Sequence record: LT598654.1
DNA length: 64,000 nt
Reading direction: 5' to 3' (one strand)
Below the pieces are notes generated by a model that saw only the letters and a program-made list of their open reading frames with translations, searched no databases and had not been told where the DNA came from. Position numbers and translations under genes: made by a program. Positions within the stretch are counted from its first letter, which is position 1, and each line of letters opens with the position of its first letter. Shown here in pieces: positions 41,075 to 62,041 of this stretch.

Positions 41075-44000
41075 TTACTTCTTCCCGGTCATGTTTTTAA
41101 GTTCGGCGCTATGCTCACGGCTACGCACTAACTTTAATTGCTGGATTGCTTCAAGTACTTTATCCATGTTCTTGATAGTGTATCCTGCTTTCAACAACTC
41201 ACGAAGTTTAGCTTTCGCTTCGGTCTTGGTAACAGCAAAGAAGATACTCATACCCTCATGCAGCTTCCACTTACCGCCTCGACCCGCACCAGGAATGGTT
41301 TGGTTAAGGTGCTTCTTCATCATTGGGTTAGTGCGCATATCAACAGTGATACGCAAACGGTCAGGCATAACAACTGGGTAAATCTTAATTGTCTTACGGT
41401 CTCTACTCTCACGGTGACGAGTATAGAAGAAGTTAGGCAATTCTGATTGTACCTTAGTAGCCTGTTTCATGTTGAAGTTCATTCGGTTTGCATCTTCGAA
41501 CACATCCAACACCGCTTCAAGACGTTTGGTACTAGCACGATCAAGTTTCATCTTGTCGTCAATGTAATCCAGTGCCTTATCAAACAGTGGGTAACGAATG
41601 AATTCACAATACGCGAATTCACCAAACTCCTGGAAGCCTAAGTTTTTAAGTGTCTTAGAATCCGGGTCGTTAGCATTAACGTGCAGTGCCAAGAATCCGT
41701 TATAGATAGATGGAATAACTGAGATAGCCATATCGCGTACCTCTACACCATCCTGAATCTTAACGTCTTTACCTGATTTAATCGGGTCAAGTTTCTTGAC
41801 TACCTTGTTAACACCATCGTTAACTGGTTTGTTCTTACGAATGTTCTCGCGGCGAATCTTAGCCTTACGACTAACAGACTTTTCTTCCTCAAGATTTTTC
41901 TCAACACGTTTACGTCTTCGTTGCTCCGCAGCTTTCTTCTTAGCAAGCTCTTTGTCTTTCTTAGCCTGGTCGGCTTCGATACGCTTACGCTCACTTTCGG
42001 TAGCCCAAGGTTTGTCAGTAGAGAAGAACTTCTTGAAGTCTTCCTGAGTTACCTTAGCAGCAACAAATAAACGGCGAGGATGTACACGACCAATTTCATC
42101 GTTACCTGAATAACGCATACGCACGTTAGAAACAGGCATCTTAGGATCAATGTACTTGGTACCGTCTTCGCGTGTAACGTAGTTGACAGTGAAGCCAACA
42201 ATGACACCCGTACCGAACTCTGAACGTACAGGTAGTCCACGCAGAACTTTAGTTAGCTGTTCTTCGGTAAGACCTTCTAACTGCTCCAAGTTACCATCGT
42301 AATTCTTATCAGTCCACTCACCATACCAATCAAGGAATCGAGTTAGTCCAAAACCATCAGGGTCAGGAATGTTCTGATTAGGTAGAATAGGTACATTAGT
42401 CAGACGTTTGAAATCTGGTAATGCGTCTACCATCGGTAAGTCCTGCATAGCAGCAAGAGTTGTCTTACGCATTTCGTGGAACTCTTGTCCCTCGATTGCG
42501 TTCAGTTCAGCTTTCGCAGCGAAGTGATCAACAAATGAATCAAAACCTTCAGTAGCAGCACTGATAAGAGTCTTAACATCCATTGAAATCTTAGGTAAGG
42601 TAATACCCATAATATCTTCGTAACGTGGGTTACCTTTTTCATCGAACTTGGTTTTCTCAACAGTCTTCCACATCAGACGAGCAACTTTCGCTACTTCCAA
42701 TGAGCCTTCTGCCATCAACCAGTCAATGTAGATTACTTCACGGCGCATATCACCAGGCTTACCATTTTCAATCTTGGCAGCAGCTGGATCAGGACGGAAG
42801 ATACGAGCAGTAGACTGTTCATAGTCACCTGGTGACCACGGAGTCTCTACACGAATAATACGTGAAGCCATTTGCAAGTTGTGACCTTCCGTAATAGCCT
42901 GTTCGTTAGCAATCAGGATTTTAACATCAGGGTCAGTCTTGAACGCTTCAACGTTCTCCCATTTCTCAGCAACCTGCCCATGGAAACGACGAGCAACTGA
43001 TTTGTACTTAGGAGGTAGCGACTTGTAGATAGCATCTACTGAACGTGTATAACGACAGAAGATAAGTACCTTACCGTGCATTTCTTCCTTCCAATGTTCT
43101 AAATCTTCATCGGGTGGAATATTGCTAGGCGGACATTCGCGACGCTTCAAGCTTACTTCTTCGGTTTCTAACCGACGGCGCATGTAACGAAGACCTTTGT
43201 GCTCTACAACATCAAGTTCACGAGGAATCATACCTTGTTGCCAGCGAACAACACGAGCACCGCTGGTAGCGTTAGGGTCGTAGTCGAATACCTGGAAGTG
43301 ACGGTCAAGACGTTTTTCTACAGCACGTACTTTAGCACTAACAAACGTAGGAGGTACACCAGCTTCTTTAGCAGCAACGATAAATGCGTCATCACCCCAT
43401 GGGTCAACGATTAACTGCTCCAGCTTTTGCATGTAGGATTTAAACAACTGAGGATTAATAGCACTCAGTTCATCGTCATCATCAAAGTCCAGTTCTTCGG
43501 TGTTACCGTCTTCGTCATCACCTTCGTCTTCTTGGTCTTCACCTTGTGTACCTTTGTACGCTTTAATCTTCTCTTCCAATTCCTGGATAGTAGACATAAG
43601 CAACGCATTGTACACCTGCATGAAAATTTCATCATTCGGATCAGGGTCATCCGGGTCAAGCAACTTAATCGGTACGAAAGCATCGATAGGAGTAGGAAGC
43701 ATGAATGCCCATTCCTTACGCTTAACCGTAATTACGGCTGCGTTCTGACCGAACTTACTGCGTACACGGATTGCACCATCAGCAGCACTAGCATCGAAAG
43801 CGAAATCATTTGGCGTACGGAAAGTATGAGCACTAAATAGAGCCGACTGACCTACTACGTCTTCAAGAAGACCGTGAATCAAAGTACCTGTTGCAAGACG
43901 CGAGTACTTAACGTGAGGTGCAGTAAACACTTGCTTGATTGTAGCGTGTACAATCGAAATCTTACCTTTAGCAGGATCAAATTTCTTAGCTTTGTGTGAT

Positions 44001-46903
44001 TCATCCAATGCAACGTACTGGTACTTCTGACGTTTAATGAATTCACAACCACCGTAAAGCTTCAACTTACGAGGACCGTAACTAATATCTTCTTCTTTAG
44101 ACTTCAAGAAGTTGATACCAACAAAGCTGATTGTATTAGGTGGAGCGTTTTGAATTAATTCTTCAAGCTTCTCCTCACCCCAAGTATCAAAGCTGTCTTT
44201 GGTAATTGGGATAGCGTTCCATGAACCCTTGGTGATTTTAGCTAAGTCTTCACACCAGTTAGCAACGAGTTTATCTGGACAGATAACCAAGTACCGCATA
44301 GGTTCAGATGATTCACGAACCATAGCACCAATGTCTAACAGAAGCGTGATTGTCTTACCGCCACCTGGATGAATATCAAGTACCGCGAACTTAGGTTTGT
44401 TCCGCAGATACTTGTGCGCTTTAATCTGGTGAGGGAATACTTTACTTCCGCTTGCAATACCAGGCATCTGAATATCAGAAACATCGATGGACTCGTCCAT
44501 GCTGTAGCTTTCAGATTCCTGCTCAGCCTGTTCAAAGATATTGATTGCATTAGGTACGTACTTAGAGAACATGTAAGCCATTGGCATAATAACGTGGGTA
44601 ACGTCATTATAAGGCATCATGTAACCACCTAAAGTAGCATCAAATTCTTCAAGAGGTTGGAACAAGTCGCGAGGGTCAGCAAGAGTAATCTGCTCACATA
44701 CCAACTTGAATAGTAAACCACCCAAGTAGTTGTAGACGTTACCGAACTCAGCCATTGTACTACTGAAAGAATTAAAGTAAGCGCCATGCTCTTTAATTTC
44801 GGTATGTACGTTCTCTGCACCAACTTCTTCAAACACAACATCAAACAGGTTACCACCTGGAGAACCCATTGCATCTTTCATCGCATCGTGAAGACAGCTA
44901 AAGATAATCTCTACTTCATTACCTTCGGTAGAATTTTTCAGCTTAACATCACTTGATAACCATGCGCTGTAAAGAGCGTTGTCCAATTTACTTTCAGACA
45001 GGTTAGTGATATTGAGTTCAGACGCTGCCTGCTTAATCAGTTCTTCGAGACCTTTTACTTTGTTCTTACGTAACAGGAACACGTATGTACGTAACAGCTT
45101 TTTAAAGCGGTCGTTGAACAAGAAAGGTAGACGGTTGTTAACTGGGTAGCCTACATAAGCATCTTTCTTGGGATCCATATCCGAGAAGTCAGCACCCGGC
45201 ATCATGTAGTTTAAGCTTTGCGTAAAGTTTTTCTTCTGGTCACGTTCCTGCTCTTGTGCAAAGTCGTAACCCAAGTAATCCGCAATAGCCAACGCACTAG
45301 GTTCGGTAGAGCCGTTCAAGTCGGTTGCAATCTGAGAGAATGCGCTAGACACACCAGCAGACAGTGCAACGTTGTAATCCCAGTTGAATGCAAGCAATGC
45401 ACCTTTGTACCGCTCTAACTGTTTCTTACGCGCAATAACCGCAGACTCTACTCGGTAATCTTTTTTAGACACCACGAAAGCTCTGCTGATCAAAGTAGCA
45501 GTATCAGTCAGAGGAGCACCTGCACGGTAAGATGCTTCCAATGCCGCATCCAGATCACGTTCATAAGCTTCTGCGTTATTGAAGCCAGTGTCTTCGGTAC
45601 GAGGCATAAACGTTAGCAGACCACGTGGGCTAACACCGATACGGTCTTGGTTTACACGACCTGGATCTTTAGGCAGGTTGTTATCGTCACGGTGCTTCAA
45701 CAGGATGCTGTTTTTCGAAGCAGGGATAATGTAACGAGGCAAACGCTGGAATGCCGCACGACCTTTGAGGTTTGCATTCGAGATACGAGAACCTTTAGGA
45801 CGTAAATAGACTTTACCCCATTGGTCAATCCAGTTAGTCAGAGCGTACAGGTTAAGCGTACCGTCGGTGGTTTGTGAAATGTAATCCACATACTCACGAG
45901 GTAAGTTCATTGCTAAACTTACATGGAACTTCTGCATAACTGCCGATTCTTTAGAAACATGCTGAGTTAAATCAGGTTCTGTAAGTTCTGTAACGTCTTC
46001 CGGGTTTTGGTCTTTGTACTTTAACTTGTTGTAGTAGCTGCTCATTGCGGCTACAGCATTCTTATTAGGCGGAACCATCACAAGAATAGAGAAGTTAGGA
46101 TGCAAAGAACTGTGAACCTGTTCGTTAGCAAAGATACCTGGATTAAAACCGAACTTACGTGCGAACACTTGGTCCAGTGAAGTAAAGTCAAAATCAAAAG
46201 GTAACTGAACTTGACGCCAATCCGTACAGGTTTCTACACTAAGAGCAGAACCAAAGATAAGCTTTTGGATTTCTTCCATCACAGACATTGCATCTTGTGC
46301 AACGCTTGAAGCATAGTGGCGTGTGTAAGCATTATCATAACCAATACCAGCAGCAGCCATGATAGGTTCTTCATAAGATGCAAGACCAAACGCAAGACCC
46401 GCACTAGTAGAAGATCCATCACCAGAGTAAGCGGGTACACCGGTAAACATAATGTCTTTACCGCCTTTGAAACGCTTACTGTCTTGGATTGTATGGTACT
46501 GACCTGAACTCATAGCACCTAAGAAAGAGCGTGTGAGTTCATCGACAAGTTCTTCACCTGATGCTGCCTGCTTAATAAGCTCTACACGGCTCATTACGCG
46601 GTTTTTAAATTCGTCGGCATCTGATTCAAGAATGTCTTCGTAACGACCACCGCTAGTAAGCAGGTGGTTAAGTATACGGTACATGTTGTTAAGCTGAGCA
46701 GAATAATTAACCAGACTACCAACCATGATAGAAAAGTCTACAGCTTTTAAGCCTGCTTTATTTTTGCTTCGCTTAGGAAAGAACGTGTTTTCGTAGTCGG
46801 CTGCCTTGTTGCCTTCTAGTTTAACAGGTGCAAGAACTTCTTGTATGTTCATACCTGCGCTTAAACTTTCAAGACCATTGGCTGCACTATTTTCGTTTGA
46901 CAT
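41075..46903 (-). CDS. Very large SNF2-family helicase/ATPase (1942 aa)
   Basis: HQIKA, LDIHPGGGKT, LVICP, ALDESH, LATGTLI, KVLIFC, EGHNLQMASRII...PWSPGDYEQSTARIFR. Confidence 0.9.
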   Translation of the reverse strand: MSNENSAANGLESLSAGMNIQEVLAPVKLEGNKAADYENTFFPKRSKNKAGLKAVDFSIMVGSLVNYSAQLNNMYRILNHLLTSGGRYEDILESDADEFKNRVMSRVELIKQAASGEELVDELTRSFLGAMSSGQYHTIQDSKRFKGGKDIMFTGVPAYSGDGSSTSAGLAFGLASYEEPIMAAAGIGYDNAYTRHYASSVAQDAMSVMEEIQKLIFGSALSVETCTDWRQVQLPFDFDFTSLDQVFARKFGFNPGIFANEQVHSSLHPNFSILVMVPPNKNAVAAMSSYYNKLKYKDQNPEDVTELTEPDLTQHVSKESAVMQKFHVSLAMNLPREYVDYISQTTDGTLNLYALTNWIDQWGKVYLRPKGSRISNANLKGRAAFQRLPRYIIPASKNSILLKHRDDNNLPKDPGRVNQDRIGVSPRGLLTFMPRTEDTGFNNAEAYERDLDAALEASYRAGAPLTDTATLISRAFVVSKKDYRVESAVIARKKQLERYKGALLAFNWDYNVALSAGVSSAFSQIATDLNGSTEPSALAIADYLGYDFAQEQERDQKKNFTQSLNYMMPGADFSDMDPKKDAYVGYPVNNRLPFLFNDRFKKLLRTYVFLLRKNKVKGLEELIKQAASELNITNLSESKLDNALYSAWLSSDVKLKNSTEGNEVEIIFSCLHDAMKDAMGSPGGNLFDVVFEEVGAENVHTEIKEHGAYFNSFSSTMAEFGNVYNYLGGLLFKLVCEQITLADPRDLFQPLEEFDATLGGYMMPYNDVTHVIMPMAYMFSKYVPNAINIFEQAEQESESYSMDESIDVSDIQMPGIASGSKVFPHQIKAHKYLRNKPKFAVLDIHPGGGKTITLLLDIGAMVRESSEPMRYLVICPDKLVANWCEDLAKITKGSWNAIPITKDSFDTWGEEKLEELIQNAPPNTISFVGINFLKSKEEDISYGPRKLKLYGGCEFIKRQKYQYVALDESHKAKKFDPAKGKISIVHATIKQVFTAPHVKYSRLATGTLIHGLLEDVVGQSALFSAHTFRTPNDFAFDASAADGAIRVRSKFGQNAAVITVKRKEWAFMLPTPIDAFVPIKLLDPDDPDPNDEIFMQVYNALLMSTIQELEEKIKAYKGTQGEDQEDEGDDEDGNTEELDFDDDDELSAINPQLFKSYMQKLEQLIVDPWGDDAFIVAAKEAGVPPTFVSAKVRAVEKRLDRHFQVFDYDPNATSGARVVRWQQGMIPRELDVVEHKGLRYMRRRLETEEVSLKRRECPPSNIPPDEDLEHWKEEMHGKVLIFCRYTRSVDAIYKSLPPKYKSVARRFHGQVAEKWENVEAFKTDPDVKILIANEQAITEGHNLQMASRIIRVETPWSPGDYEQSTARIFRPDPAAAKIENGKPGDMRREVIYIDWLMAEGSLEVAKVARLMWKTVEKTKFDEKGNPRYEDIMGITLPKISMDVKTLISAATEGFDSFVDHFAAKAELNAIEGQEFHEMRKTTLAAMQDLPMVDALPDFKRLTNVPILPNQNIPDPDGFGLTRFLDWYGEWTDKNYDGNLEQLEGLTEEQLTKVLRGLPVRSEFGTGVIVGFTVNYVTREDGTKYIDPKMPVSNVRMRYSGNDEIGRVHPRRLFVAAKVTQEDFKKFFSTDKPWATESERKRIEADQAKKDKELAKKKAAEQRRRKRVEKNLEEEKSVSRKAKIRRENIRKNKPVNDGVNKVVKKLDPIKSGKDVKIQDGVEVRDMAISVIPSIYNGFLALHVNANDPDSKTLKNLGFQEFGEFAYCEFIRYPLFDKALDYIDDKMKLDRASTKRLEAVLDVFEDANRMNFNMKQATKVQSELPNFFYTRHRESRDRKTIKIYPVVMPDRLRITVDMRTNPMMKKHLNQTIPGAGRGGKWKLHEGMSIFFAVTKTEAKAKLRELLKAGYTIKNMDKVLEAIQQLKLVRSREHSAELKNMTGKK

Positions 46904-46915
46904 AGTGTGCTTCCT

Positions 46916-47482: not shown

Positions 47483-47483
47483 G

Positions 47484-50377: not shown

Positions 50378-51595
50378 TCAGCGCCCTCTTTTAGGACTGG
50401 ATACCCAACCGTTAAGCGCACGGCCCGGGCCTGAACCATAACCAAGATTGGTAACTGGCGAGTTTGTAATAGTAACTGCACCAAAGGCGTTTCCGAAACT
50501 TAAAGAATTCGCGCCTTGCGAACCGTCTCCACTTGTAACACCAGCCTTAACAAGGAGTTTTTTATAAGGCTTGATGTTGGTTTCGATTTGATTCTCTACA
50601 CGACCTAAAGCGCCTTCAATCTGTGGAGTTCTGTCGATATTGAGGCTAACTGTTTGACCTGAGAAATCAAATGCGAGTGCTCCTTCTGCCTGTAACTGAG
50701 ACCCTAAAGCGTAGTAACAAGCACAAGTAATCCAAGAATCCAATATAGGACCTTGCATGTTCATACCTGTAAAACTTGTACCCATTGGGCCTATCTGATT
50801 AAACAGGTTGAGTCCCCTAAACAGATAGGTCATTATATCACCTACCGTGTATTGAAGACTAGGAATAACGTTTTCTAGTTTTGCTTTATTAATGTATGCC
50901 TCGATCTGATTCGCTGCAACCATAACCTGGGGAGTAATAACCCACAAGTTCTGGGAAAGCATACGAGGCATAATAGCACCGTTTGGCTCATGTTGAATTA
51001 GAATATTGTAGGGCGCAAGTGACTTTGCCTCAAAACAATCTTTAATTCGAATATTGATTCGGGTAGACGTTGCAGTATATGAAATACCGTTAGTCGAAGT
51101 CGCTGATACCTCAAGCCCTTCAAAAACAGCTATGTTGTTCTTGTATGCTGAGATATAAAGTTTGTCACCTTGATCTGGATTAAACGTCAAGGGAACAGTA
51201 ATGTCTACGTTACCTATACCTCGCATCTGCTTTATATAAACAGAATCCGAGATACGGTTATCAGCACCAGGTTGAACGATGATGAAATTTTTAAGTGTAT
51301 GGGTATCACCTTCATCATCTACAAGAGTCCAACGAGTCTGGAACTTTGTATCGTCAAGAATGTCCATTACAGGTATAGCAAAATCAATTTGCCAGCTTCC
51401 AGTATCTTGTCCTGGAGTCGCAACACCTGTAGCAATAACACTTCTGTCTTGGTCGTTGTCGTAAAGAACAACCTCTGGACCTGTTGTGGTTTCACTTGGA
51501 TAAATAGGTTCATCCCATTCATCCAAAAACATTTCAGTAATGTTTATCGATTCACCTTCAACAACAGTGGGTATCAAATCTTTTTGCGTAGTCAA
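50378..51595 (-). CDS. Putative head-tail/neck structural protein (405 aa)
   Basis: Beta-rich Ig-like N-half and a helical C-half (LFRGLNLFN...FDFSGQTVSLNIDRT) reminiscent of jumbo-phage neck proteins; weak assignment. Confidence 0.4.
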   Translation of the reverse strand: MTTQKDLIPTVVEGESINITEMFLDEWDEPIYPSETTTGPEVVLYDNDQDRSVIATGVATPGQDTGSWQIDFAIPVMDILDDTKFQTRWTLVDDEGDTHTLKNFIIVQPGADNRISDSVYIKQMRGIGNVDITVPLTFNPDQGDKLYISAYKNNIAVFEGLEVSATSTNGISYTATSTRINIRIKDCFEAKSLAPYNILIQHEPNGAIMPRMLSQNLWVITPQVMVAANQIEAYINKAKLENVIPSLQYTVGDIMTYLFRGLNLFNQIGPMGTSFTGMNMQGPILDSWITCACYYALGSQLQAEGALAFDFSGQTVSLNIDRTPQIEGALGRVENQIETNIKPYKKLLVKAGVTSGDGSQGANSLSFGNAFGAVTITNSPVTNLGYGSGPGRALNGWVSSPKRGR

Positions 51596-54081: not shown

Positions 54082-54115
54082 AAAAAGGAGAGCCCTAAAT
54101 AAAAGGCCCTCCTTT
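54082..54115 (-). terminator. Intrinsic terminator of the histone-like gene
   Basis: AAAGGAGGGCC-loop-GGCTCTCCTTT followed by TTG. A second 7-bp hairpin ATCTAAG-TTTAT-CTTAGAT lies at 54134-54152. Confidence 0.8.
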
Positions 54116-54159
54116 GAGAGAAGTTAAACTAAGATCTAAGATAAACTTAGATTAAGCTA

Positions 54160-54807
54160 TTACTTCTTGGCGGTACGAGAACGACCGCGAGGCTTCGCTG
54201 GAGCTTTACCTCGAGGCTTAGCTGGTGCCTTGCCACGAGGCTTAGCTGGAGCTTTAGCTGGTGCCTTGCTACCTGCTGACTTACGTGGGTTAGGGTTAAC
54301 CGGCTTCTTAGCTGCGTGTTTTTCACGAGCGGTCTTCTGACGTTCAGCTAACTTGGTACGAGCTTCTTTCTGCTTGGTACGCATAGTCTTACCGCGTTCA
54401 CGCCATTTTTCCATCTTCGCTTTGTAAGCAGCACGAGCTTTCTGAGCAGCAGTTGGCTTCTTAGCAGCACCACCAGTAGAACCGGCTTTACCTTTACGAC
54501 GCTCAGCAAGAACCTTTGCACGTTCTGCTTTCTTTTTCTTCTCCGCCGGAGTCATTTTCTTTTCGCGTTCCTTACGCGCCTTTTCAGCAGCTCGTTTTTC
54601 AGCAGCAGTTTGGCGTTTCTTAGGACCGGTAGACTTACGAGTGCGGCGAGTTGGCGCTGTAGTAGAACCAAACTGAGAACCTACACCCTTACGACCGCGT
54701 GGCTTAGAAGGAGTTTTGCTTCCAGCTGGCTTGCTGCGTGGCTTAGAAGCAGGTTTGCTGCGAGGCTTAGAAGGACCTTTCGCAGGAGTTTTACGAGTAG
54801 TAGCCAT
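54160..54807 (-). CDS. Histone H1/HMGA-like basic DNA-binding protein (215 aa)
   Basis: Almost entirely K/R/A/P/S/T/G; repeats KPRSKPAS and KPRGKAPA; KPRGRK and KPRGRS AT-hook-like cores; TPAK and TPSK motifs; SD GGAG. Confidence 0.85.
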   Translation of the reverse strand: MATTRKTPAKGPSKPRSKPASKPRSKPAGSKTPSKPRGRKGVGSQFGSTTAPTRRTRKSTGPKKRQTAAEKRAAEKARKEREKKMTPAEKKKKAERAKVLAERRKGKAGSTGGAAKKPTAAQKARAAYKAKMEKWRERGKTMRTKQKEARTKLAERQKTAREKHAAKKPVNPNPRKSAGSKAPAKAPAKPRGKAPAKPRGKAPAKPRGRSRTAKK

Positions 54808-54841
54808 ATTTTATTTCTCCGATATGGATATTAAAAAACAA

Positions 54842-55020: not shown

Positions 55021-55057
55021 AATATTTTTTGAATATTTTTTGAATATTTTTTGAATA
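55021..55057. repeat. Tandem 11-bp repeat (AATATTTTTTG)x3 plus AATA; phased A-tracts
   Basis: Read directly from the sequence; lies in a segment (54961-55075) of about 17% GC by hand count. Confidence 0.95.
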
Positions 55058-55075
55058 AATATTTACTACTTTAGT

Positions 55076-56134
55076 CTAAAAATCTGTACTAATACCAAGT
55101 TCAGAGATCGCCTCAGCTAGCATGTCTTTACCCCTGAGGTATTCTTTTTTAGAATGACCTGCACCCTTAAATACAGATGCTAGACCCTCGTAAGGGTTGA
55201 TACTAGGTAAGTCGGTAGTCTGATTAACAAAAGACTCTAACTCATTTTCAATATCAATCTTGCCTCCCTTTGCTGTCCACAACTGAGCAATGTTTGGGTT
55301 CTTCAACATCAAGTCAGTAGGTACAACGATACCCTCATTAACGTACAGTCGATACTTGATACCAGGTTCAGTACTAAGCTTCGCAAACTGCGAACTAGTT
55401 TCGATGTGCTCGGTAAGAAGTCTAAAGCCAGGCTTGTTATCTATAAACCTGTGATTGACTTTCATCTTTCCTTCTTTAACACCAGCTTTAATTTCAATAA
55501 AGCCCTTAGGTAAAGCTTCACCGAAGTTGGACTGATATGGGTTACCGCAATATATAACTCTGCGTTTCTTCATGTGCTGATACTGGTGTATGTGACCGCT
55601 TATATTGAAGTCACGACGAGGACTCTTAAACTCCTTGTGTGATTTAAGAGTACGTCCATTATCACCGATAGCGCCAGTGTATTCCACGTGAACCAGATTT
55701 AAACAAGGCTGTTTGTTAGGAATACTCTCCATCACAGGGTGATTCATCATGTTAACAACACAGCCGTCCACTTTGATCTGCTCAGGACTGAGATATAAAT
55801 GGAACGTTTCGAAGAAGCCTTCATCAACCAATAGCTGTAACAAGTCCATGCTTGTTTTAGAAATATCGGAGAAGTCATGGTTACCACCGACATAGTAAAT
55901 GTCTAACAGACCATCGTACTTCTTTATTAACGTAATCATTTTGATGTAGCTGTCTGCTTCCATCTTGTACGTGTCACTAATATCACCAGGAATAAATACG
56001 TGACGAATACCTTCAGAAATAGCGTACTTGAAAATCTTTTCTACCTCACGCAACTGTCTATCAATGTGATCATGAGGGAACAGCTTTTTAAGTTTTTCTA
56101 AGTGCCAGTCACTGGTTACGATAGCATGTAGCAT
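55076..56134 (-). CDS. sbcD: SbcD/Mre11-like metallophosphoesterase nuclease
   Basis: SDWHL, PGDISD, GGNHD, LVH, SGHIH, YCGNPYQ.NFGE. Confidence 0.93.
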   Translation of the reverse strand: MLHAIVTSDWHLEKLKKLFPHDHIDRQLREVEKIFKYAISEGIRHVFIPGDISDTYKMEADSYIKMITLIKKYDGLLDIYYVGGNHDFSDISKTSMDLLQLLVDEGFFETFHLYLSPEQIKVDGCVVNMMNHPVMESIPNKQPCLNLVHVEYTGAIGDNGRTLKSHKEFKSPRRDFNISGHIHQYQHMKKRRVIYCGNPYQSNFGEALPKGFIEIKAGVKEGKMKVNHRFIDNKPGFRLLTEHIETSSQFAKLSTEPGIKYRLYVNEGIVVPTDLMLKNPNIAQLWTAKGGKIDIENELESFVNQTTDLPSINPYEGLASVFKGAGHSKKEYLRGKDMLAEAISELGISTDF

Positions 56135-56439
56135 GACTTTAATTCTTCCTTTTCGTTTCTTATATCCATGGTGAAACTATCTAAGAATTTCTCCACAGCT
56201 TTGTGTCTAATCTTTACAGAGGGTCGTGCAGTTTTCCAGGTACAGTTTTTATAAACATCACCGTCTATGTCATAGGATTTAGTGCATCTGCCTCTCTTGT
56301 CATATTCGTTAAATCTACAAAACACTAAACGGTTGTTGGCTTTTTCTATATCAAATTGGGTGTAGTCAAAAGAAATGAAGAAAGTCCAAACACGTTTCAG
56401 ACCTTTCTCTTTGTTGTTGAGGGTTACTGTTATCTGCAT
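56116..56439 (-). CDS. Hypothetical protein (107 aa)
   Basis: Strong SD AAGGAG; overlaps the sbcD start. Confidence 0.7.
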   Translation of the reverse strand: MQITVTLNNKEKGLKRVWTFFISFDYTQFDIEKANNRLVFCRFNEYDKRGRCTKSYDIDGDVYKNCTWKTARPSVKIRHKAVEKFLDSFTMDIRNEKEELKSCYMLS

Positions 56440-56508
56440 ACCGGATTCTCCTTATGTATGCTATTTACAGTATTTGAAGAAATGAAGGGAACGTCCTTGT
56501 TCCTTATT

Positions 56509-57057
56509 TTACTCTGCTTTAGGTTCAGGGTCGAACCTGTTGCAGGTTAACGCACGGCATAATTCTCGGATAGGAACTTGGTAGCCGCTAGGGGTATGGG
56601 TTTCTATGCAATTGTGTTTTCGAATAACAGGTTTAGCACGGATTAGTAGTCCAGCCCTGAACAAAACATCGAGGTGTTGAGCAACAGTGTCAAAGCTAAG
56701 CTGTATGTTGTACATTGACTTAACTTTGCGAATCACTTGGTACTTGGTAAGTGTCTTGCTGAGGGAATTTCGATTGAGCATATTGTAGTTGACTACAGTA
56801 CCACGACTATAACGTACCAAAAACTGAGAAACATTATAGTCAAGAGCACAGATTGCTTTCCATATCTTAACAGAAGTTTTACTGGTGTCTGGATAAGAAA
56901 TACAGTACAGGTCTGTGAACGCAATCAACGCCAAACTGTGACGCTTAAGGTTGTAGTCGATTGTGGTTACACAATCAACGAGACTGACCAGCACAGAGTG
57001 GTCAGGCTCTATAGACTTAGTGAGAGTGGTTTGGGTCATCGCAGCCACATTCATCAT
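56509..57057 (-). CDS. Hypothetical protein, possible winged helix (176-182 aa)
   Basis: LTKYQVIRKV...LSFDTVAQHLDVLFRAGLLIR is a typical wHTH recognition helix-wing pattern. Alternative start at 57039. Confidence 0.6.
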   Translation of the reverse strand: MMNVAAMTQTTLTKSIEPDHSVLVSLVDCVTTIDYNLKRHSLALIAFTDLYCISYPDTSKTSVKIWKAICALDYNVSQFLVRYSRGTVVNYNMLNRNSLSKTLTKYQVIRKVKSMYNIQLSFDTVAQHLDVLFRAGLLIRAKPVIRKHNCIETHTPSGYQVPIRELCRALTCNRFDPEPKAE

Positions 57058-57667
57058 CCTCTAAATCGAATTCACCATCATCTGGAAAGTCTAAAGGCAT
57101 TTCCAGTGCGAAAGGGATGTAGTGAGGATTAGGTGCATACTCACCCGTTTCAGAATTGACTTCAAACCAACCCCAAGACTCCAGTTGAATGCACACACGC
57201 TTAACAGTAGACGGAGTACCTTTCCATTTGAAAAGGTTCTTCATACGACGATAAAGAATACCAGGAGAAGCATAGATAACTTCCATATCTTGCATAAACG
57301 CATTGATATAATTGGAACTATCTTTTGCAGCTTCCAGCAGGTCTTTATCTACCTTCGCCTCTTCATCAGTGCGAAGAAGGTGCAGGATATTACCAATGTT
57401 ACTGCAACGATCAAGCTCGTCCATGTAAGTTGTATAGTTAATATCCAACGCAGCTAAGGTAAGCAATTCGAAAGTCTCACGGAACTTGGCATCACGATAA
57501 GTAAAACCCGGAACCAAAACAGTCTGCTGCAACAGACTAAAGAAGTGCGTAACATTCTGCTTGATCAGAGGCTCTGCTTCTGCTACAGACTTGGCAGCAT
57601 CGGTAGCAGCAACAATACTTAATGCTTCGTCAGCATTGGCAGGAGTTTGAGTTTGAATAGGTTCCAT
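57017..57667 (-). CDS. Hypothetical protein, possible C-terminal winged helix (216 aa)
   Basis: TPSTVKRVCIQLESWGWFEV...GEYAPN wHTH-like segment; acidic tail ending CGCDDPNHSH. Confidence 0.65.
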   Translation of the reverse strand: MEPIQTQTPANADEALSIVAATDAAKSVAEAEPLIKQNVTHFFSLLQQTVLVPGFTYRDAKFRETFELLTLAALDINYTTYMDELDRCSNIGNILHLLRTDEEAKVDKDLLEAAKDSSNYINAFMQDMEVIYASPGILYRRMKNLFKWKGTPSTVKRVCIQLESWGWFEVNSETGEYAPNPHYIPFALEMPLDFPDDGEFDLEDDECGCDDPNHSH

Positions 57668-58639
57668 TTAACTTACCTTCTTTTTCTTGAGTCTACGACG
57701 CTTAGGTTTGGTGGTCTCTTTCTCTTTGGTTTTCTTAGCAGGTTTAGCTGCCGGTTTCTTTTTAGCTAAGGCTTTCTGTTCTTCGGCAGCTTTCTTCGCT
57801 GCACGTTTCTCTTTAGCCTGTCGCTGAAAATCTTTTATGGTAACACCTTGTTGATCACTGTACAGGCTTTCATTGTCGATAACCTTAACAATGTAGTTCA
57901 GGTCGTAAGCCTGCATACCAACTTTATTACCGATAGCTTCGTAGCTGAACGCTTTACCTGATTCTTTGGCTTCGCGTATCATAGCACAAGCATCCTGCGC
58001 TTTCTTACCTACGTCACTAAGCAAGAGTTCGCGGAATTTATCCTGCTTATATTTGGTTAGGTCTAAGTCACCGCGCAACTTTAAGAACATACGCTCCAAA
58101 GTATCGGCATCATGACCTTGATAAATCCAATTACAGATAGCGAAGGTAACAGGCTTCTGCATGGTTGAAGACTTCAAGGTATAAATGATAGTCATCAAAG
58201 GCATCAGGATTGTACCAACCGATTTAGTACGGTCGAGAACTTTGGACATATAGTTTTCTTTGTCACGAGAAACAGCACCCGGTTCTGCAACAAATTGTTC
58301 GGTACGCCATTCAGTCATCAAGTATTTGATACCAGGCATTTCAGGATTGTTTTTAAAGTCCAGCCAAATACTATTGGTAAACTCTGCACATCGGAAGCAA
58401 GGAGCAAACACGTAAAAGCTGTGATGCTTAAATGCTGAGTGCGATAGCAATTCAAAGTTACGACGTAGATCACGGTAGGAGATAAAAACAATGTTGCGGG
58501 ATTTCTTTGCAACTGATGTTTTTAATTTTGCTCCGAACGAAACCAAATGAAACTCAGAAGGGTGCATATCATAGGTATCATGTGCCCAACTGAGGAATTG
58601 TTCTGGCGAATGGTTCGCAATACATAACAAGCGAGACAT
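57668..58639 (-). CDS. Hypothetical protein with HTH-like segment and basic tail (323 aa)
   Basis: FSYEAIGNKVGMQAYDLNYIVK is HTH-like; C-terminal KKKPAAKPAKK...KRRRLKKKK. Confidence 0.7.
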   Translation of the reverse strand: MSRLLCIANHSPEQFLSWAHDTYDMHPSEFHLVSFGAKLKTSVAKKSRNIVFISYRDLRRNFELLSHSAFKHHSFYVFAPCFRCAEFTNSIWLDFKNNPEMPGIKYLMTEWRTEQFVAEPGAVSRDKENYMSKVLDRTKSVGTILMPLMTIIYTLKSSTMQKPVTFAICNWIYQGHDADTLERMFLKLRGDLDLTKYKQDKFRELLLSDVGKKAQDACAMIREAKESGKAFSYEAIGNKVGMQAYDLNYIVKVIDNESLYSDQQGVTIKDFQRQAKEKRAAKKAAEEQKALAKKKPAAKPAKKTKEKETTKPKRRRLKKKKVS

Positions 58640-59598
58640 TAAGACTCCTGTTCAGTTATTCTTATACTCTTTTTACTATTTACACTTTCGCTCATTCTAG
58701 TTTTAAAGAGTTCCTGCAGGTCATCAGGCAGTATCTTGGTGCTAGTAGTGAATCCACCTACATAAAGACTACCGCCTCCCTCCATGAGTTCAGAGATTTT
58801 ACCTGCGTGTAGTTTACTTTCTGGAAGTGTGCGAACAGACCAATAACGTTTATTGCCTGTGTCGGTATAACTAAGAGCAATACCGCACTTACTAGCAAGG
58901 ATAGTTAAACAACCTTCGACAAAAGTTTTAGGTATGTTTAATATTGGAACCTGCTTGTCCAGAATATCGTAGTACTCAGCCCGGTTGTTGTACGAGTTAA
59001 CTAGGCTTTCAATAAACTTGTAGTAATGGTGACCGTCGTTGATCAGCTTTGCTACAGATTCAGTATTACGAAGGCGCTCCAAGTTGTTTTGGAAGAAAGT
59101 ATTCAAACTGATAAAATCAAAGTGAACACTAAGACCCATACAAATAAAATATGAATTAGGTACAGTTGGGTTGGACTGCCTTACCTGCATATCTTCAATA
59201 GCCAAAAACAACTGAGGCACAGGCTGGTCATCTACAAAGTGAGACCATGCCAAACAACAGCTGGCTCTGTTTGAACTGTGAATGACCTCAAGTTTTTTAC
59301 GAATACTCGGGTCAAAGGATTCAGCGATATGCTTTGTACCTGGATGGTGATCAATAAAGTAAACTTTATCAGCCGAGTATACCAGAGTATCAAGATTACG
59401 CATAGCGATAGACAGTCCGATTATATAGACTGTCTTGCCCGAAACATCATAGGTATGTAGGTTTTCAAGTGTACAATAATCAACACCTTCGTAGTGAGCA
59501 CTGTTTTGGAAAATCTTCCAAGCAGCGTATGCTCCTGCTTTTCCATTAAGAGTACCTTCGTGGAAGAACACTATGATTTCTTTATTGAGCTTTCTCAT
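58639..59598 (-). CDS. DHH/DHHA1-family protein (NrnB/RecJ-like), probably catalytically degenerate
   Basis: IDHH motif, SCCLAWSHF, DHHA1 WSVR...GGGS...GGF; the other metal-binding Asp positions are substituted. Confidence 0.8.
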   Translation of the reverse strand: MRKLNKEIIVFFHEGTLNGKAGAYAAWKIFQNSAHYEGVDYCTLENLHTYDVSGKTVYIIGLSIAMRNLDTLVYSADKVYFIDHHPGTKHIAESFDPSIRKKLEVIHSSNRASCCLAWSHFVDDQPVPQLFLAIEDMQVRQSNPTVPNSYFICMGLSVHFDFISLNTFFQNNLERLRNTESVAKLINDGHHYYKFIESLVNSYNNRAEYYDILDKQVPILNIPKTFVEGCLTILASKCGIALSYTDTGNKRYWSVRTLPESKLHAGKISELMEGGGSLYVGGFTTSTKILPDDLQELFKTRMSESVNSKKSIRITEQES

Positions 59599-62041
59599 GG
59601 GTCTTACCTGAGTTGATAGAACTTACCCCATTCCGCTTTTCAATTGTCCACAATTCACACTCACTGAAAATATCAGTAGACTTAGGTGTAATCCAAAATA
59701 TGTGAGGAACAAGTGAACGGAGTTTAGGAATAAATTCTTTTGCTAAGTGTTCACGTACAGCATCACTACAAGCACTATCAGGTTCATCCAGTATCATAAA
59801 GTTGGTTCTGCGATTAGCAGGAACAAGCGGTAGAATACTGATAGCGAAAAGTAATCTAAAGCAATTAGTTTCCGCACCTGAGAGTTTTGATATGTCACTT
59901 GAAAGTCCGTTCTTCCTGGTGACCACGGCATCAATTCCCTGAGTACCTGCATCTAACTTAAATACCATTGTCTCAGGAAATACCATATGACTAAAGTTGT
60001 TTAGGTTAGCTTCTATTATTTTTAGTATTTTGGTTGCTTGTCGTAGTTTAAGGTTTGTATTGCCGAATGCACCGTAGAGAGTTTCGACAATCTTTTTCTC
60101 CTCAATTATAGGACGCGACTTAGATAGCTTTGCATCTAATTCGTGCTTCTGTTCAGTGAGCAGAGACCAATTACTCTTTGCACTTTCCAACGCAACAAGT
60201 TTTGAACTCTGTTCTTTTGAGGATGCGTTTAACTCCGAAATACTATCTTCGTATTCGGAGATTGAAGAATCCATATCAGCCAAATGTGTTTTGAGTTTAG
60301 CGCCTGCTTTTTTGTATTCAAGCTTAACGCAAAGGCTTTTAATGGATTTCAATTCGTCTTTACCAATAGAGGTAATAGACTTGAATAACTGACTAAGACG
60401 ATCAAACTGTTTGAAGTAATCATATATATCTTCGATAAGCTTATCTACGGTTTCTGAATTCAAGTCAGGATAGTTAAGCTTACCTTTTGGAGACACGGGT
60501 ACTGTGATGGAGTCAAGCTTAATGTCGATTTCATCGAGACTAGATACAATCTCCTCCAATTCAGAAAGCTTTTTACTTTCCTTCTTGAGGTTCTCGCGCA
60601 TGACATTCAAGGCTTCCAATTCTTTTTCAAGCTTGGTAGTATCCGTAATAGACTCTTGCAATTCATTGTAAGCATGTACCAGTTTCTGCGCCTGTTTTAA
60701 TTGCTTCAACTTAGGTAAACGCTTTTCAGCTTTCTTAGCCTGAGTTTTGAGTTTTGCCTGGTTAATCTTCTGATTACACGTAGGACATTCTGAATGGTCT
60801 TCAAGCTCTTGGTAAAGTTCAATAACAGTACTGAGCATAGACATTTCATCAGACACATCAGTATCCAGATCAACATCAGTAACCTTTTTAAACCCGAAGC
60901 TTTTTAGTTTATCTAAAATACCATCTGCTTCGTCTATAGTTTCAATCTGCTCCTCAAGCTTTGCGCTGAGTTTGGAATAATCTGATTTAACTTTGGAAAA
61001 GGCTTCGTCTATTTCACGTAATGCCTTGCGGATTAATTTAACACCTAATGACTTCTGTTTCTTTGGAAGTTTAAGTGCCTTAACTTCGGCTAGCAGGTCT
61101 TTCTTGGTAGCATTTAACTTAGCGACTTTCTTCTTGTGGTCGGCAACTGCTTGCTCATAGTCCTCAAGCTTAGTACCTAAGATCAAGTCGGCTTCCAATT
61201 CTTTTTCCAGCACATGAATATCGGAGTTATACTTGGTCAAAGGCTTAGATGCTTTAGCCAAAAACTTTAGGGCTTTAACCAATTTATCTAGTGCTTTGAA
61301 GTCACTCTTGGCATCATTAAGTTCTTGGTAAAGCTGTTCCAGTTTACTGCTTGCTGCTTCTGCTTTAGCACGTAGAGATTTTAATTCTTTGTTTTTCTTT
61401 GCAGACCAACCTGTTTTACCTAAGCTACGCTCAACACTATCCAACTGAGCAGAAAGAGAACCGAATTCAATTTCTTTTTCTTTAATTGCTTGCTTGCGCT
61501 TGCTAAAGTAGGCTCGAATCTGATCATAAAAATGCAGGTCAAACAGATTAGTAATAAAGTTCAAGCGTTCACTCGGTTTCGCTTTTTGGAAATCACAAGG
61601 TCGTTGAGATTGAATGTACGCAGTGGTATAGAATTCTTCTTGTCGAAGTGTCCAGTGGTCTCCGAAGATACCTCTTGCTATATCACCTTTTTGTGCTTTC
61701 TGGTCTTCACCATCCAAGAACACTTTATATTTAGCGCCGATTTGGTCTAGCTGAACATGCTTACCTTCATTAGATAAGAAGTCTATTGCAATACTAGAAC
61801 CTTTTGTTCCGTGTAAATCTTTTTTGTTTTTCTTTGTTAGCGATAGAGGGTCAGCTTCATACGCAGCAGTAGGCAATGCAGACCAAAACAAACTTTTACC
61901 AGCACCGTTTGAGTTGTTCGCAATGTTACTGTCATGGTTGATACCATTTACTACTACGAAGCCGTTGTTTTCCTCTACAGCTACAGTGGCGTCCTTAAAG
62001 CTAACAACGTTCTTTAAGGTAATGCCTTTAAGGCGTATCAT
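59582..62041 (-). CDS. sbcC: SbcC/Rad50-like SMC ATPase
   Basis: Walker A SNGAGKS, Q-loop YIQSQ, long coiled coil with central Zn-hook CPTC, signature LSGAE, Walker B ILDEPD, terminal ITP. Confidence 0.93.
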   Translation of the reverse strand: MIRLKGITLKNVVSFKDATVAVEENNGFVVVNGINHDSNIANNSNGAGKSLFWSALPTAAYEADPLSLTKKNKKDLHGTKGSSIAIDFLSNEGKHVQLDQIGAKYKVFLDGEDQKAQKGDIARGIFGDHWTLRQEEFYTTAYIQSQRPCDFQKAKPSERLNFITNLFDLHFYDQIRAYFSKRKQAIKEKEIEFGSLSAQLDSVERSLGKTGWSAKKNKELKSLRAKAEAASSKLEQLYQELNDAKSDFKALDKLVKALKFLAKASKPLTKYNSDIHVLEKELEADLILGTKLEDYEQAVADHKKKVAKLNATKKDLLAEVKALKLPKKQKSLGVKLIRKALREIDEAFSKVKSDYSKLSAKLEEQIETIDEADGILDKLKSFGFKKVTDVDLDTDVSDEMSMLSTVIELYQELEDHSECPTCNQKINQAKLKTQAKKAEKRLPKLKQLKQAQKLVHAYNELQESITDTTKLEKELEALNVMRENLKKESKKLSELEEIVSSLDEIDIKLDSITVPVSPKGKLNYPDLNSETVDKLIEDIYDYFKQFDRLSQLFKSITSIGKDELKSIKSLCVKLEYKKAGAKLKTHLADMDSSISEYEDSISELNASSKEQSSKLVALESAKSNWSLLTEQKHELDAKLSKSRPIIEEKKIVETLYGAFGNTNLKLRQATKILKIIEANLNNFSHMVFPETMVFKLDAGTQGIDAVVTRKNGLSSDISKLSGAETNCFRLLFAISILPLVPANRRTNFMILDEPDSACSDAVREHLAKEFIPKLRSLVPHIFWITPKSTDIFSECELWTIEKRNGVSSINSGKTHEKAQ

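What the first reader, a model, noticed from the sequence alone, without database searches (positions are those of the whole stretch)
41075..62041. Candidate phage chromatin-like module: H1/AT-hook protein, giant SNF2 ATPase, Rad50-Mre11 and winged-helix proteins
Seen: within about 21 kb on one strand are a histone H1/HMGA-like basic protein (54160-54807), a 1942-aa SNF2 ATPase (41075-46903), SbcC/Rad50 and SbcD/Mre11, and three HTH-like proteins between the latter two. A strongly acidic protein lies elsewhere in the window (7152-8894). Established: in eukaryotes SNF2 translocases remodel protein-coated DNA and acidic tracts chaperone basic histones. Inference: the phage may coat its genome with its own basic protein, for compaction or shielding from host defences, and use the SNF2 motor to move or strip it. 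Each gene type is known individually in jumbo phages; their acting as one system is my hypothesis.
Basis: inference. Interest (0 to 1): 0.7.

Follow-up and report, generated by a model that had tools for sequence, protein, structure and literature searches.

The report
Virion basic protein plus Snf2 motor
This jumbo phage encodes a histone-tail-like, extremely basic protein and a 1,942-residue Snf2-type DNA motor; the two are conserved together in dozens of related phages and, in one relative, both are found in the virus particle, so part of the 'phage chromatin' idea is plausible, while the Rad50/Mre11 nuclease and small winged-helix genes nearby appear to be only neighbours.

Summary
The window is Phage NCTB (LT598654.1, positions 186001-250000). 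All reported ORFs exist at the stated coordinates. The 215-aa protein is hyper-basic: pI 12, net charge +64, no Asp. It has no H1 globular domain and no canonical GRP AT-hook, although orthologues in the Lu11 and HRDY3 phages carry true RGRP/GRP hooks. A basic gene of this kind follows SbcD in 61 of 64 related metagenomic loci. The 1,942-aa protein has a true Snf2 motor: the top 50 PDB fold matches are all Snf2 enzymes. The motor lies between an orphan 790-aa N-terminal domain and an unassigned 500-aa C-terminus. The key new evidence comes from published proteomics of the relative PaBG, where the orthologues of both proteins (gp191 and gp202, confirmed here by exact mass) are bands from purified virions. 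The best reading is therefore a packaged DNA-condensing basic protein plus a packaged Snf2 translocase. Whether the motor strips the basic protein from DNA is untested. SbcC/SbcD with a DHH nuclease form an ordinary recombination set. Two of the three candidate HTH genes are essentially lineage-specific (one or no related locus). The acidic protein is conserved, but nothing links it to the others. More distant phages keep the Snf2 gene without the syntenic basic gene. Verdict: partly supported, a new variant of known packaged-protein systems.

The parts
54160..54807 (-). Hyper-basic, low-complexity protein (215 aa, 23.3 kDa, pI 12, net +64). It has N-terminal SKPR repeats, a central K/R/E/A-rich region likely to be helical, and C-terminal APAKPRGK repeats. 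It is the positional orthologue of PaBG gp191, a virion protein.
   Evidence: PMC7412058 Table 1
54184..54256 (-). A 24-bp x3 tandem repeat encoding the C-terminal APAKPRGK units. Contigs from four public runs carry one extra 48-bp unit here.
54100..54135 (-). Terminator-like hairpin followed by a T-run just after the basic gene. A GGAG ribosome-binding site lies upstream at about 54815-54822. Together these suggest a separately expressed gene.
44534..46903 (-). Giant ATPase, residues 1-790: an N-terminal domain with a confident model (pLDDT 87, pTM 0.82) and no structural or sequence relative outside this protein family.
42584..44533 (-). Giant ATPase, residues 791-1440: Snf2-type two-lobe motor. 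Invariant motifs are PGGGKT at 846-851, DESH at 967-970, TGT at 1005-1007 and Q1363/R1367/R1370.
43442..43564 (-). Disordered acidic loop inside the motor (residues about 1114-1154, 17 D/E of 41). It is acidic in all 26 homologues although its sequence is not conserved.
41075..42583 (-). Giant ATPase, residues 1441-1942: C-terminal beta-rich and alpha/beta domains with no family assignment.
50378..51595 (-). Head-tail connector protein (phrog_17327). It lies between the basic gene and the ATPase, which shows that the stretch between them holds virion morphogenesis genes.
55076..56134 (-). SbcD/Mre11-type nuclease, a neighbour of the basic gene and not part of the proposed pair. In 55 of 64 loci an SbcD homologue lies upstream on the same strand, with the basic ORF as the next gene.
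59582..62041 (-). SbcC/Rad50-type ATPase with NGAGKS Walker A, a CPTC zinc hook at residue 419, an LSGAE signature and an FMILDEPD Walker B.
58639..59598 (-). DHH-family phosphoesterase (phrog_4771), probably part of the recombination nuclease set.
57668..58639 (-). Conserved protein of unknown function (phrog_18876, present in 24 of 64 loci) with a short H1-like basic C-terminal tail.
56509..57667 (-). Two overlapping, essentially lineage-specific ORFs (182 aa and 216 aa) with weak winged-helix leads. They are found in none and one of 64 related loci.
56462..56470 (-). CTGTAAATA, identical to the annotated Lu11 'middle/late promoter' core, upstream of the 56116-56439/SbcD genes.
7152..8894 (-). 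Protein with a basic N-terminal 300 aa, an acidic middle tract (53% D/E over residues 301-500) and a small C-terminal domain (phrog_35607). It is conserved in the clade, but nothing links it to the basic protein.

Best explanation
The 21-kb stretch is not one dedicated system. It is a syntenic core segment of the NCTB/PaBG/Lu11/Y3 group of jumbo myophages, and it places three things side by side:

1. A recombination nuclease set: SbcC, a DHH nuclease, a conserved protein of unknown function, and SbcD.
2. A separately expressed gene for a hyper-basic protein that is probably intrinsically disordered and resembles an H1 tail or AT-hook protein.
3. Head and neck morphogenesis genes, ending in a roughly 1,940-aa protein built from an orphan N-terminal domain, a Snf2 double-stranded-DNA translocase motor with an acidic loop, and an unassigned C-terminal region.

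Shown: the genes and their architecture, their conservation across the clade, and the presence of both orthologues in purified PaBG virions.

Inferred: the basic protein is packed with the genome in the capsid as a counter-ion or condensing protein, and because it is probably unfolded it can leave through the tail with the DNA. The Snf2 protein is a packaged enzyme delivered to the cell, where it translocates on the incoming genome.

Its most attractive job, removing the phage's own basic protein or other DNA-bound proteins so that the genome becomes usable, is a hypothesis. I put it at about 0.2 on its own.
For: - Identity and synteny: the window matches Phage NCTB at 100%. The same gene order is seen in Y3, PaBG, Lu11 and HRDY3.
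- The gene immediately after SbcD is hyper-basic in all five phages: 215-432 aa, pI 11-12, and the only plausible coding ORF of that kind per locus (the few other flagged ORFs are short, or an HNH endonuclease). This also holds in 61 of 64 IMG/VR loci, with 54 distinct sequences and 14 of 17 lineages.
- Lu11-type and HRDY3 orthologues carry canonical GRP or RGRP AT-hooks.
- PaBG virion proteome: band 1 is gp202 at 221,161.95 Da and band 8 is gp191 at 35,272.92 Da, with gp191 seen in several bands (PMC7412058). My computed masses are 221,159.27 and 35,272.47 Da for PaBG_00202 and PaBG_00191. SbcD would be 40,444 Da.
- PaBG_00202 aligns with the NCTB ATPase end to end at 31% identity.
- Snf2 fold and invariant ATPase motifs in 30 homologues.
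- The gene sits in morphogenesis blocks. It follows connector and HNH genes here, and lies next to the head protease and major capsid protein genes in Motura.
- An acidic loop is conserved in 26 of 26 homologues.
- Scored against a sheath+connector codon reference, the basic gene ranks 2nd and the ATPase 5th of 49 genes, while SbcD ranks 33rd and SbcC 27th.
- The basic gene has a strong ribosome-binding site and its own terminator-like hairpin.
Against: - The virion evidence comes from one relative, from MALDI of Coomassie bands. A sticky basic protein or a large DNA-binding enzyme could co-purify with particles or with released DNA. There are no data for NCTB itself.
- The basic proteins cannot be linked by sequence statistics: a phmmer-type search finds nothing at E<=1e-3. 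Orthology rests on position, composition and a few short shared motifs.
- Co-conservation within one clade with a rigidly syntenic core does not show functional coupling.
- Outgroups keep a shorter Snf2 in the same connector-HNH-Snf2 arrangement without the syntenic basic gene, so the motor does not strictly need it.
- The ATPase lies about 650 bp from DNA polymerase I, separated by one small gene, and is annotated as a DNA helicase, so a role in replication or recombination cannot be excluded.
- Expression timing could not be obtained: the contig depths are flat.
Confidence: 0.5

Rival explanations
1. The basic protein, the Snf2 ATPase, SbcC/SbcD, the winged-helix proteins and the distant acidic protein act together as one chromatin-like system. 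In it the genome is coated, remodelled, chaperoned and processed.
For: All these genes exist. The basic gene is always adjacent to SbcD. The acidic protein is conserved in the Erwinia/Dickeya/NCTB subgroup.
Against: - The 182-aa and 216-aa winged-helix candidates occur in none and one of 64 relatives.
- SbcCD with a DHH nuclease is a standard phage recombination set, and SbcCD is among the most widely conserved jumbo-phage genes (PMC13282480).
- SbcC/SbcD codon usage differs from that of the basic gene and the ATPase.
- The acidic tract is nearly absent in the PaBG homologue, and the gene lies beside tail-fibre and ligase genes.
- In Motura, SbcD is followed by a non-basic gene.
Confidence: 0.06
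2. Both proteins work only inside the infected cell. The giant Snf2 would be a replication, recombination or transcription helicase (RapA-like or Rad54-like). The basic protein would be a phage nucleoid-associated protein that organises replicating phage DNA or silences the host chromosome. Their detection in PaBG particles would then be carry-over.
For: The ATPase gene lies close to DNA polymerase I, separated by one small gene. RapA, Rad54, CSB and Mot1 are all among the top fold matches. Iyer et al. propose recombination roles for Snf2 helicases of other jumbo-phage groups (PMC7824862).
Against: - The 221-kDa protein is a visible Coomassie band from CsCl-purified particles, and the basic protein appears in several bands, which suggests processing (PMC7412058).
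- The clade already has a UvsW-type helicase (window 31508-33175).
- The gene sits in morphogenesis blocks, including in outgroups.
Confidence: 0.2
3. The packaged Snf2 protein has nothing to do with the basic protein. It would either be a genome-internalisation motor that pulls the 258-kb DNA into the cell, or a DarB-like anti-defence enzyme that protects or clears the incoming DNA. The basic protein would be only a passive counter-ion.
For: The orthologue is found in virions (PMC7412058). The motor is a dsDNA-translocase type. Outgroups have the motor without the syntenic basic gene. ZorD, a defence Snf2, is among the fold matches. The next gene downstream is conserved and gives a sub-threshold peptidoglycan-binding hint.
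Against: No methyltransferase or nuclease domain was detected, unlike DarB. No membrane or tail-anchoring feature was identified. The conserved acidic loop is more easily explained by contact with a basic partner.
Confidence: 0.15
4. The basic ORF is not a DNA-binding protein at all. It could be a structural or decorative low-complexity protein, for example part of the 'hairs' of these hairy myophages, or an assembly scaffold.
For: It is low-complexity and fast-evolving. The clade is known for hairy particles (PMC6143709). The gene lies at the start of a morphogenesis block.
Against: A net charge of +64 with no Asp, and canonical AT-hooks in orthologues, are hallmarks of nucleic-acid binding. 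External fibres with that charge would be unusual.
Confidence: 0.05

Closest known systems
Histone H1 C-terminal tail and bacterial H1-like proteins (AlgP, chlamydial Hc1/HctA)
   Same: K/A/P-rich, repeat-rich, very basic and presumably disordered. AKKPAAK-type repeats occur in the Y3, PaBG and Lu11 orthologues.
   Different: It has no winged-helix globular domain and no significant match to the HctA model. The orthologue is a virion protein in a phage, not a cellular nucleoid protein.
HMGA-type AT-hook proteins
   Same: Orthologues in the Lu11 and HRDY3 lineage carry 1-8 GRP/RGRP cores flanked by K/R and P.
   Different: The NCTB protein has only PRGR/PRGK variants without the trailing proline. 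AT-hooks occur in only one sub-lineage, so they do not define the family.
Packaged basic core proteins: T4 internal proteins IPI-III, adenovirus protein VII, baculovirus P6.9 (from general knowledge)
   Same: These are abundant basic proteins packed with the genome. T4 internal proteins and adenovirus protein VII are delivered with it, and protein VII is later removed from the DNA. PaBG gp191 is in virions and appears in several bands, as if processed (PMC7412058).
   Different: There is no sequence relationship. Its location inside the capsid, its copy number and its injection are not shown for this family.
Virion-packaged large helicase-like enzymes: P1 DarB; poxvirus NPH-I (D11) and VETF small subunit (D6), both Snf2-family (from general knowledge); a predicted helicase in the phiKZ head (PMC13282480)
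   Same: These are large SF2 or Snf2 ATPases carried in the particle to act on the incoming genome.
   Different: It has no methyltransferase domain, unlike DarB. The phage has no virion RNA polymerase for the ATPase to serve, unlike poxviruses. The orphan 790-aa N-terminal domain is found only in this family.
Mot1, RapA, CSB, Chd1, Ino80 (Snf2 enzymes that displace proteins from DNA)
   Same: These are the best structural matches of the motor (E 2e-17 to 7e-15, TM by target up to 0.79). All move along dsDNA to evict or reposition bound proteins.
   Different: Sequence identity is only 12-16%. The flanking domains are unrelated. No substrate is known.
T4 gp46/gp47 and bacterial SbcCD
   Same: The ATPase carries a zinc hook and the nuclease carries Mre11 motifs (PHROGs 77 and 100).
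   Different: Nothing unusual, apart from the genes inserted between the two subunits (a DHH nuclease, a conserved protein of unknown function and lineage-specific ORFs).

Membership tests
Swi2/Snf2 ATPases | Walker A and DExH (motif II) in lobe 1 | tested here: met
   PGGGKT at 846-851 and DESH at 967-970 are invariant in 30 homologues.
Swi2/Snf2 ATPases | Lobe 2 (Helicase_C) with motifs V and VI and the W-x-P element after motif V | tested here: met
   Helicase_C at E 7e-11. The protein aligns with Sulfolobus Snf2/Rad54 across this region, and Q1363, R1367 and R1370 are invariant.
Swi2/Snf2 ATPases | Pfam SNF2-rel_dom at its gathering score | tested here: inconclusive
   The NCTB protein scores 23.3 bits against a cutoff of 24.9. 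PF00176 is on record for most homologues.
Swi2/Snf2 ATPases | Snf2-type fold of the two-lobe motor | tested here: met
   All top 50 Foldseek PDB matches are Snf2 enzymes, E 2e-17 to 2e-13. The model has pLDDT 79.
Swi2/Snf2 ATPases | DNA-dependent ATPase and dsDNA translocation | not testable with these tools
   Needs biochemistry.
Linker histone H1 | Winged-helix globular domain (Pfam Linker_histone) | tested here: not met
   No Pfam, PHROG or NCBIfam hit.
Linker histone H1 | K/A/P-rich basic tail | tested here: met
   35% K+R, 28% A+P, pI 12.
HMGA / AT-hook proteins | G-R-P core flanked by basic residues | tested here: not met
   The NCTB protein has no GRP and four PRG[RK] motifs. The feature is met in orthologues of the Lu11/HRDY3 lineage, with 1-8 GRP cores.
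SbcCD / Rad50-Mre11 | Rad50-type ATPase with Walker A and B, a signature motif and a CxxC zinc hook in a central coiled coil | tested here: met
   NGAGKS, FMILDEPD, LSGAE and CPTC at residue 419 of 819. phrog_77 at E 5e-46.
SbcCD / Rad50-Mre11 | Mre11-type metallophosphoesterase motifs | tested here: met
   DWH, GD and GNHD motifs. Metallophos at E 1e-7 and phrog_100 at E 2e-28.
Packaged internal or core DNA-associated proteins (T4 IP-like) | Present in purified virions | not testable with these tools
   Shown only for the PaBG orthologue gp191 (PMC7412058 Table 1; mass match).
Packaged internal or core DNA-associated proteins (T4 IP-like) | Capsid-targeting signal, prohead-protease processing and ejection with the DNA | not tested
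   The only hint is that PaBG gp191 appears in multiple gel bands (PMC7412058).
P1 DarB-like packaged anti-restriction enzyme | Methyltransferase domain fused to the helicase | tested here: not met
   No methyltransferase domain by Pfam or PHROGs. The N-terminal 790 aa has no fold match in PDB or AFDB.
Winged-helix DNA-binding proteins (ORFs 56509-57057 and 57017-57667) | Recognisable wHTH domain | tested here: inconclusive
   No Pfam or PHROG hit. Sso10a scores below its threshold (15.9 bits against a cutoff of 60). The Atlas structural neighbours are winged-helix families, but the models are weak, with pTM 0.55 and 0.48.

The most novel reading that the evidence does not exclude
These jumbo phages package their genome as a simple protein-DNA 'chromatin' built from a disordered H1-tail/AT-hook protein. 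They also carry in the same particle a dedicated Snf2 remodeller, with a family-specific N-terminal domain and an acidic loop. After ejection this remodeller would strip the coat from the incoming DNA using ATP. That would be a virion-delivered chromatin-remodelling system in a bacterial virus.
Probability: 0.15. Interest if true: 0.85.

Novelty: new variant of a known kind. Interest (0 to 1): 0.55.

Why it matters
Packaged basic proteins and packaged enzymes are known in phages (T4 internal proteins, P1 Dar proteins, the phiKZ inner body). A hyper-basic H1/AT-hook-like protein conserved together with a 220-kDa Snf2 motor, both found in the particle, has not been discussed in the papers I could read (PMC7412058, PMC7824862, PMC13282480).

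If the pair works together, it would show how very large phage genomes are neutralised in the capsid and then made accessible after entry. It would also give a bacterial-virus parallel to adenovirus core proteins and to the packaged Snf2 ATPases of poxviruses.

The system can be tested now, because Y3, PaBG, Lu11 and the Dickeya phages are all cultivable. Even the modest reading corrects the database record, which calls the basic protein a 'low-complexity acidic protein' and the ATPase simply a 'phage protein' or 'DNA helicase'.

Tried and rejected
- tblastn and word-seeded phmmer searches with the basic protein found only the protein itself, or nothing. Low-complexity and bias filtering defeat these searches, so I used synteny plus composition instead.
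- The first related-loci scan, anchored on the ATPase C-terminal part, cut off the basic gene at the locus edge. I repeated it anchored on the connector gene.
- The N-terminal alignment was too variable for DNA patterns.
- No family or fold was found for the N-terminal 790 aa or for the C-terminal 500 aa.
- Fold searches in the 'viral' and 'atlas' libraries were not available.
- Expression could not be read from the public RNA-library run. It is held only as contigs, and their depth is flat.
- A candidate shared upstream motif, TAATGTTAG, is not enriched and its spacing is inconsistent, so I dropped it.
- I checked P1 DarB-like architecture and rejected it, because there is no methyltransferase domain.
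- The Y3 virion proteomics paper is not held in the library.
- I considered the RSL1 ORFs that passed the basic filter and rejected them as alternative-frame artefacts.

Full report
**Source and layout.** The window is identical to Phage NCTB (LT598654.1), a 257,877-bp metagenome-assembled jumbo phage, at positions 186001-250000. Apart from one 129-nt annotated plus-strand ORF upstream of the basic gene, every annotated gene in the 64 kb is on the minus strand, so 'on one strand' has no weight. The reported ORFs exist exactly as stated. Published work places NCTB with PaBG, Lu11, Y3, Yoloswag, Alexandra and the Dickeya AD1/JA phages (PMC7412058, PMC6143709).

**What lies in 41075-62041.** Read in the direction of transcription, the region holds the following genes:
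- SbcC, 59582-62041
- a DHH phosphoesterase, 58639-59598
- a conserved protein of unknown function with a basic tail, 57668-58639
- two overlapping ORFs of 216 and 182 aa, 56509-57667
- a 107-aa ORF, 56116-56439
- SbcD, 55076-56134
- the basic protein, 54160-54807
- two proteins of unknown function, 52721-54049 and 51592-52731
- a head-tail connector protein, 50378-51595
- two more proteins of unknown function
- an HNH endonuclease, 48274-48678
- two small ORFs
- the 1,942-aa ATPase, 41075-46903

A small conserved gene and DNA polymerase I follow. The stretch is therefore a mosaic of recombination, morphogenesis and replication genes. It is not a compact operon of DNA-coating functions.

**The basic protein: composition.** It has 215 aa, 48 K, 28 R, 38 A, 22 P and no Asp. 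Net charge is +64 and pI is 12. It carries 24-bp tandem repeats at both ends. No Pfam, PHROG or NCBIfam model matches it, so it is not a linker histone. It has no GRP AT-hook core, only four PRG[RK] motifs. Sequence searches fail because of its composition.

**The basic protein: conservation.** Position and composition identify a family. The gene directly after SbcD is hyper-basic in Y3, PaBG, Lu11 and HRDY3 (225-432 aa, pI 11-12). It is the only plausible coding ORF of that kind in each roughly 40-kb locus; the few other ORFs that passed the filter are short or an HNH endonuclease. The five proteins share short N-terminal and central motifs.

Anchoring on the connector gene gave 64 IMG/VR loci. 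Of these, 61 have such an ORF in that slot, with 54 distinct sequences. That corresponds to 39 of 42 connector clusters at 95% identity, 27 of 30 at 80% and 14 of 17 at 60%. The repeats differ between lineages (AKKPAAK, PAGKKP, SGRKP). The Lu11-like lineage and HRDY3 carry canonical GRP/RGRP AT-hooks.

The gene has a strong ribosome-binding site and its own terminator-like hairpin. Scored against a sheath+connector codon reference, it ranks 2nd of 49 genes. That is weak evidence, because the gene is small and compositionally biased.

**The giant ATPase.** Residues 770-1942 gave pLDDT 79, and residues 1-790 gave pLDDT 87 with pTM 0.82.
- The motor matches only Snf2 enzymes among the top 50 PDB hits. 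These include Mot1, Chd1, PBAF/BAF motors, CSB, SMARCAD1, RapA, Ino80, ISWI, Rad54 and ZorD, with E 2e-17 to 2e-13.
- The ATPase motifs are invariant in 30 homologues.
- The N-terminal 790 aa has no match in the PDB (Foldseek E > 6; VIA-align best Z 4.0) or in the AFDB clusters.
- A profile of the N-terminal region, searched against 1.84 billion representative proteins, finds 111 proteins. Nearly all hits are N-termini of roughly 1,700-2,700-aa proteins, evidently this family, or short fragments.
- The C-terminal 500 aa is also unassigned.
- A disordered loop inside the motor is acidic in all 26 homologues, with 9-24 D/E, although its sequence is not conserved.
- Full-length homologues lie mostly on jumbo-sized contigs, and some carry inteins.

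**The key outside evidence.** The PaBG paper lists 14 proteins identified from Coomassie bands of CsCl-purified particles. Band 1 is gp202 at 221,161.95 Da, described as 'RuvB helicase-like'. Band 8 is gp191 at 35,272.92 Da, described as 'Unknown'. The authors found gp191 in several bands and took this as proteolysis (PMC7412058).

The paper's text elsewhere calls 'gene 191' sbcD, so I computed masses from the GenBank record. PaBG_00191, the basic protein, is 35,272.47 Da. PaBG_00202 is 221,159.27 Da. SbcD would be 40,444 Da. PaBG_00202 aligns with the NCTB ATPase over its whole length at 31% identity. Both members of the pair are therefore virion-associated in a relative. Neither that paper nor two broad reviews (PMC7824862, PMC13282480) discuss the basic protein or the pairing.

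**Which genes are not part of the pair.**
- SbcC and SbcD have all the Rad50/Mre11 hallmarks. With the DHH nuclease they form an ordinary recombination set.
- A CTGTAAATA motif, identical to the annotated Lu11 middle/late promoter core, precedes the 56116-56439/SbcD genes.
- SbcC and SbcD rank 27th and 33rd of 49 against the sheath+connector codon reference, whereas the ATPase ranks 5th.
- The 182-aa and 216-aa ORFs have winged-helix structural neighbours only from weak models. They occur in none and one of the 64 related loci. The 107-aa ORF occurs in two.
- The acidic protein (phrog_35607) is conserved in 62 phage records, and Y3 gp149 has a long D/E tract. The PaBG homologue has only a short one, and the gene lies about 45 kb away between the tail-fibre and ligase genes. 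Nothing ties it to the basic protein.

**Limits of the co-occurrence argument.** The clade's core is rigidly syntenic, so joint conservation could be simple shared descent. In more distant phages the picture separates:
- Motura has a 1,528-aa Snf2 in the same connector-HNH-Snf2 order, next to the head protease and major capsid protein genes. Its SbcD orthologue is followed by a non-basic gene. A lysine-rich protein of different architecture lies elsewhere in the genome.
- phiRSL1 has no such basic ORF within 18 kb of its Snf2 gene.
- Loci L130, L135 and L136 lack the basic ORF at the syntenic position.

The motor is therefore older or more widespread than the basic gene.

**Conclusion.** The best-supported reading is a packaged basic DNA-condensing protein plus a packaged Snf2 translocase. 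Confidence is about 0.5 for that core claim and about 0.2 for the specific idea that the motor strips the basic protein from DNA. The main rivals are purely intracellular roles for both proteins, and a motor whose function does not involve the basic protein, such as genome internalisation or anti-defence. The finding is a new variant of known packaged-protein systems. It is of moderate interest and can be tested in cultivable relatives.

Noticed in passing
window 54184-54244: Contigs from four public runs all contain one extra 48-bp unit in the C-terminal APAKPRGK repeat array of the basic gene. One run is an RNA library that holds 99% of the sampled words and is probably the source sample. 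The other three are marine DNA runs of closely related strains. The deposited sequence may have a collapsed repeat, or the repeat number may vary.
   Followed up: partly
window 54160-54807 (record locus tag BN7874_281): The database record names this pI-12 protein 'Low-complexity acidic protein, XCC2875 type', which is a mis-annotation.
   Followed up: yes
window 28534-29250 and 36350-37225: GTP cyclohydrolase I and QueE-like radical-SAM genes are present (phrog_2197, phrog_2076). This suggests 7-deazaguanine modification of the phage DNA. Motura carries QueC, QueD, QueE and a transglycosylase. Such a base modification might affect how DNA-binding proteins engage the genome.
   Followed up: no
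window 7152-8894: The deposited CDS starts at 8639, but homologues in Dickeya and Erwinia phages align from residue 7-10 of the longer TTG-initiated ORF. The longer reading frame is therefore probably the right one.
   Followed up: partly
window 56116-56439: This 107-aa ORF is unannotated in the record. It has 44-46% identical homologues at the same position in the two closest metagenomic relatives (L073, L074), so it is probably a real gene.
   Followed up: partly
window 57668-58639: This conserved protein between the DHH nuclease and SbcD (phrog_18876, present in 24 of 64 loci) ends in a short H1-like basic tail. The record annotates only the last 216 aa.
   Followed up: partly
window 55021-55057: A perfect 11-bp x3.4 tandem repeat (AAAAAATATTC on the coding strand) lies in the 268-bp spacer between SbcD and the basic gene. 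Its function is unknown.
   Followed up: no
window 29920-29928 and 56462-56470: The only two copies of CTGTAAATA in the window are both intergenic, on the coding strand, and 20-30 nt upstream of gene starts. They match the annotated Lu11 middle/late promoter core.
   Followed up: partly
window 40542-41048: The small gene directly after the ATPase is conserved (49% identity over 80 aa with PaBG_00203, annotated 'putative lysozyme'). It shows only a sub-threshold peptidoglycan-binding hint, and its C-terminal half is acidic and low-complexity.
   Followed up: partly
L139 (phiRSL1) 4358-5800: phiRSL1 encodes a homospermidine synthase about 11 kb upstream of its Snf2 gene. Polyamines could be an alternative DNA counter-ion in a relative that has no H1-like ORF within 18 kb of its Snf2 gene.
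   Followed up: no
homologues P0035, P0036, P0057, P0061, P0062, P0069: Several orthologues of the giant ATPase, for example in Yersinia phage fHe-Yen9-02, carry intein or LAGLIDADG insertions. This is typical of conserved catalytic sites in essential enzymes.
   Followed up: no
L006 (Alcaligenes phage Afa-NA1, 78-kb record): A full-length ATPase homologue and other core genes of this jumbo clade appear in a record of only 78 kb with sparse annotation and an IS605 transposase. The record may be a condensed or incomplete assembly, and no basic ORF lies in the 37 kb examined.
   Followed up: no
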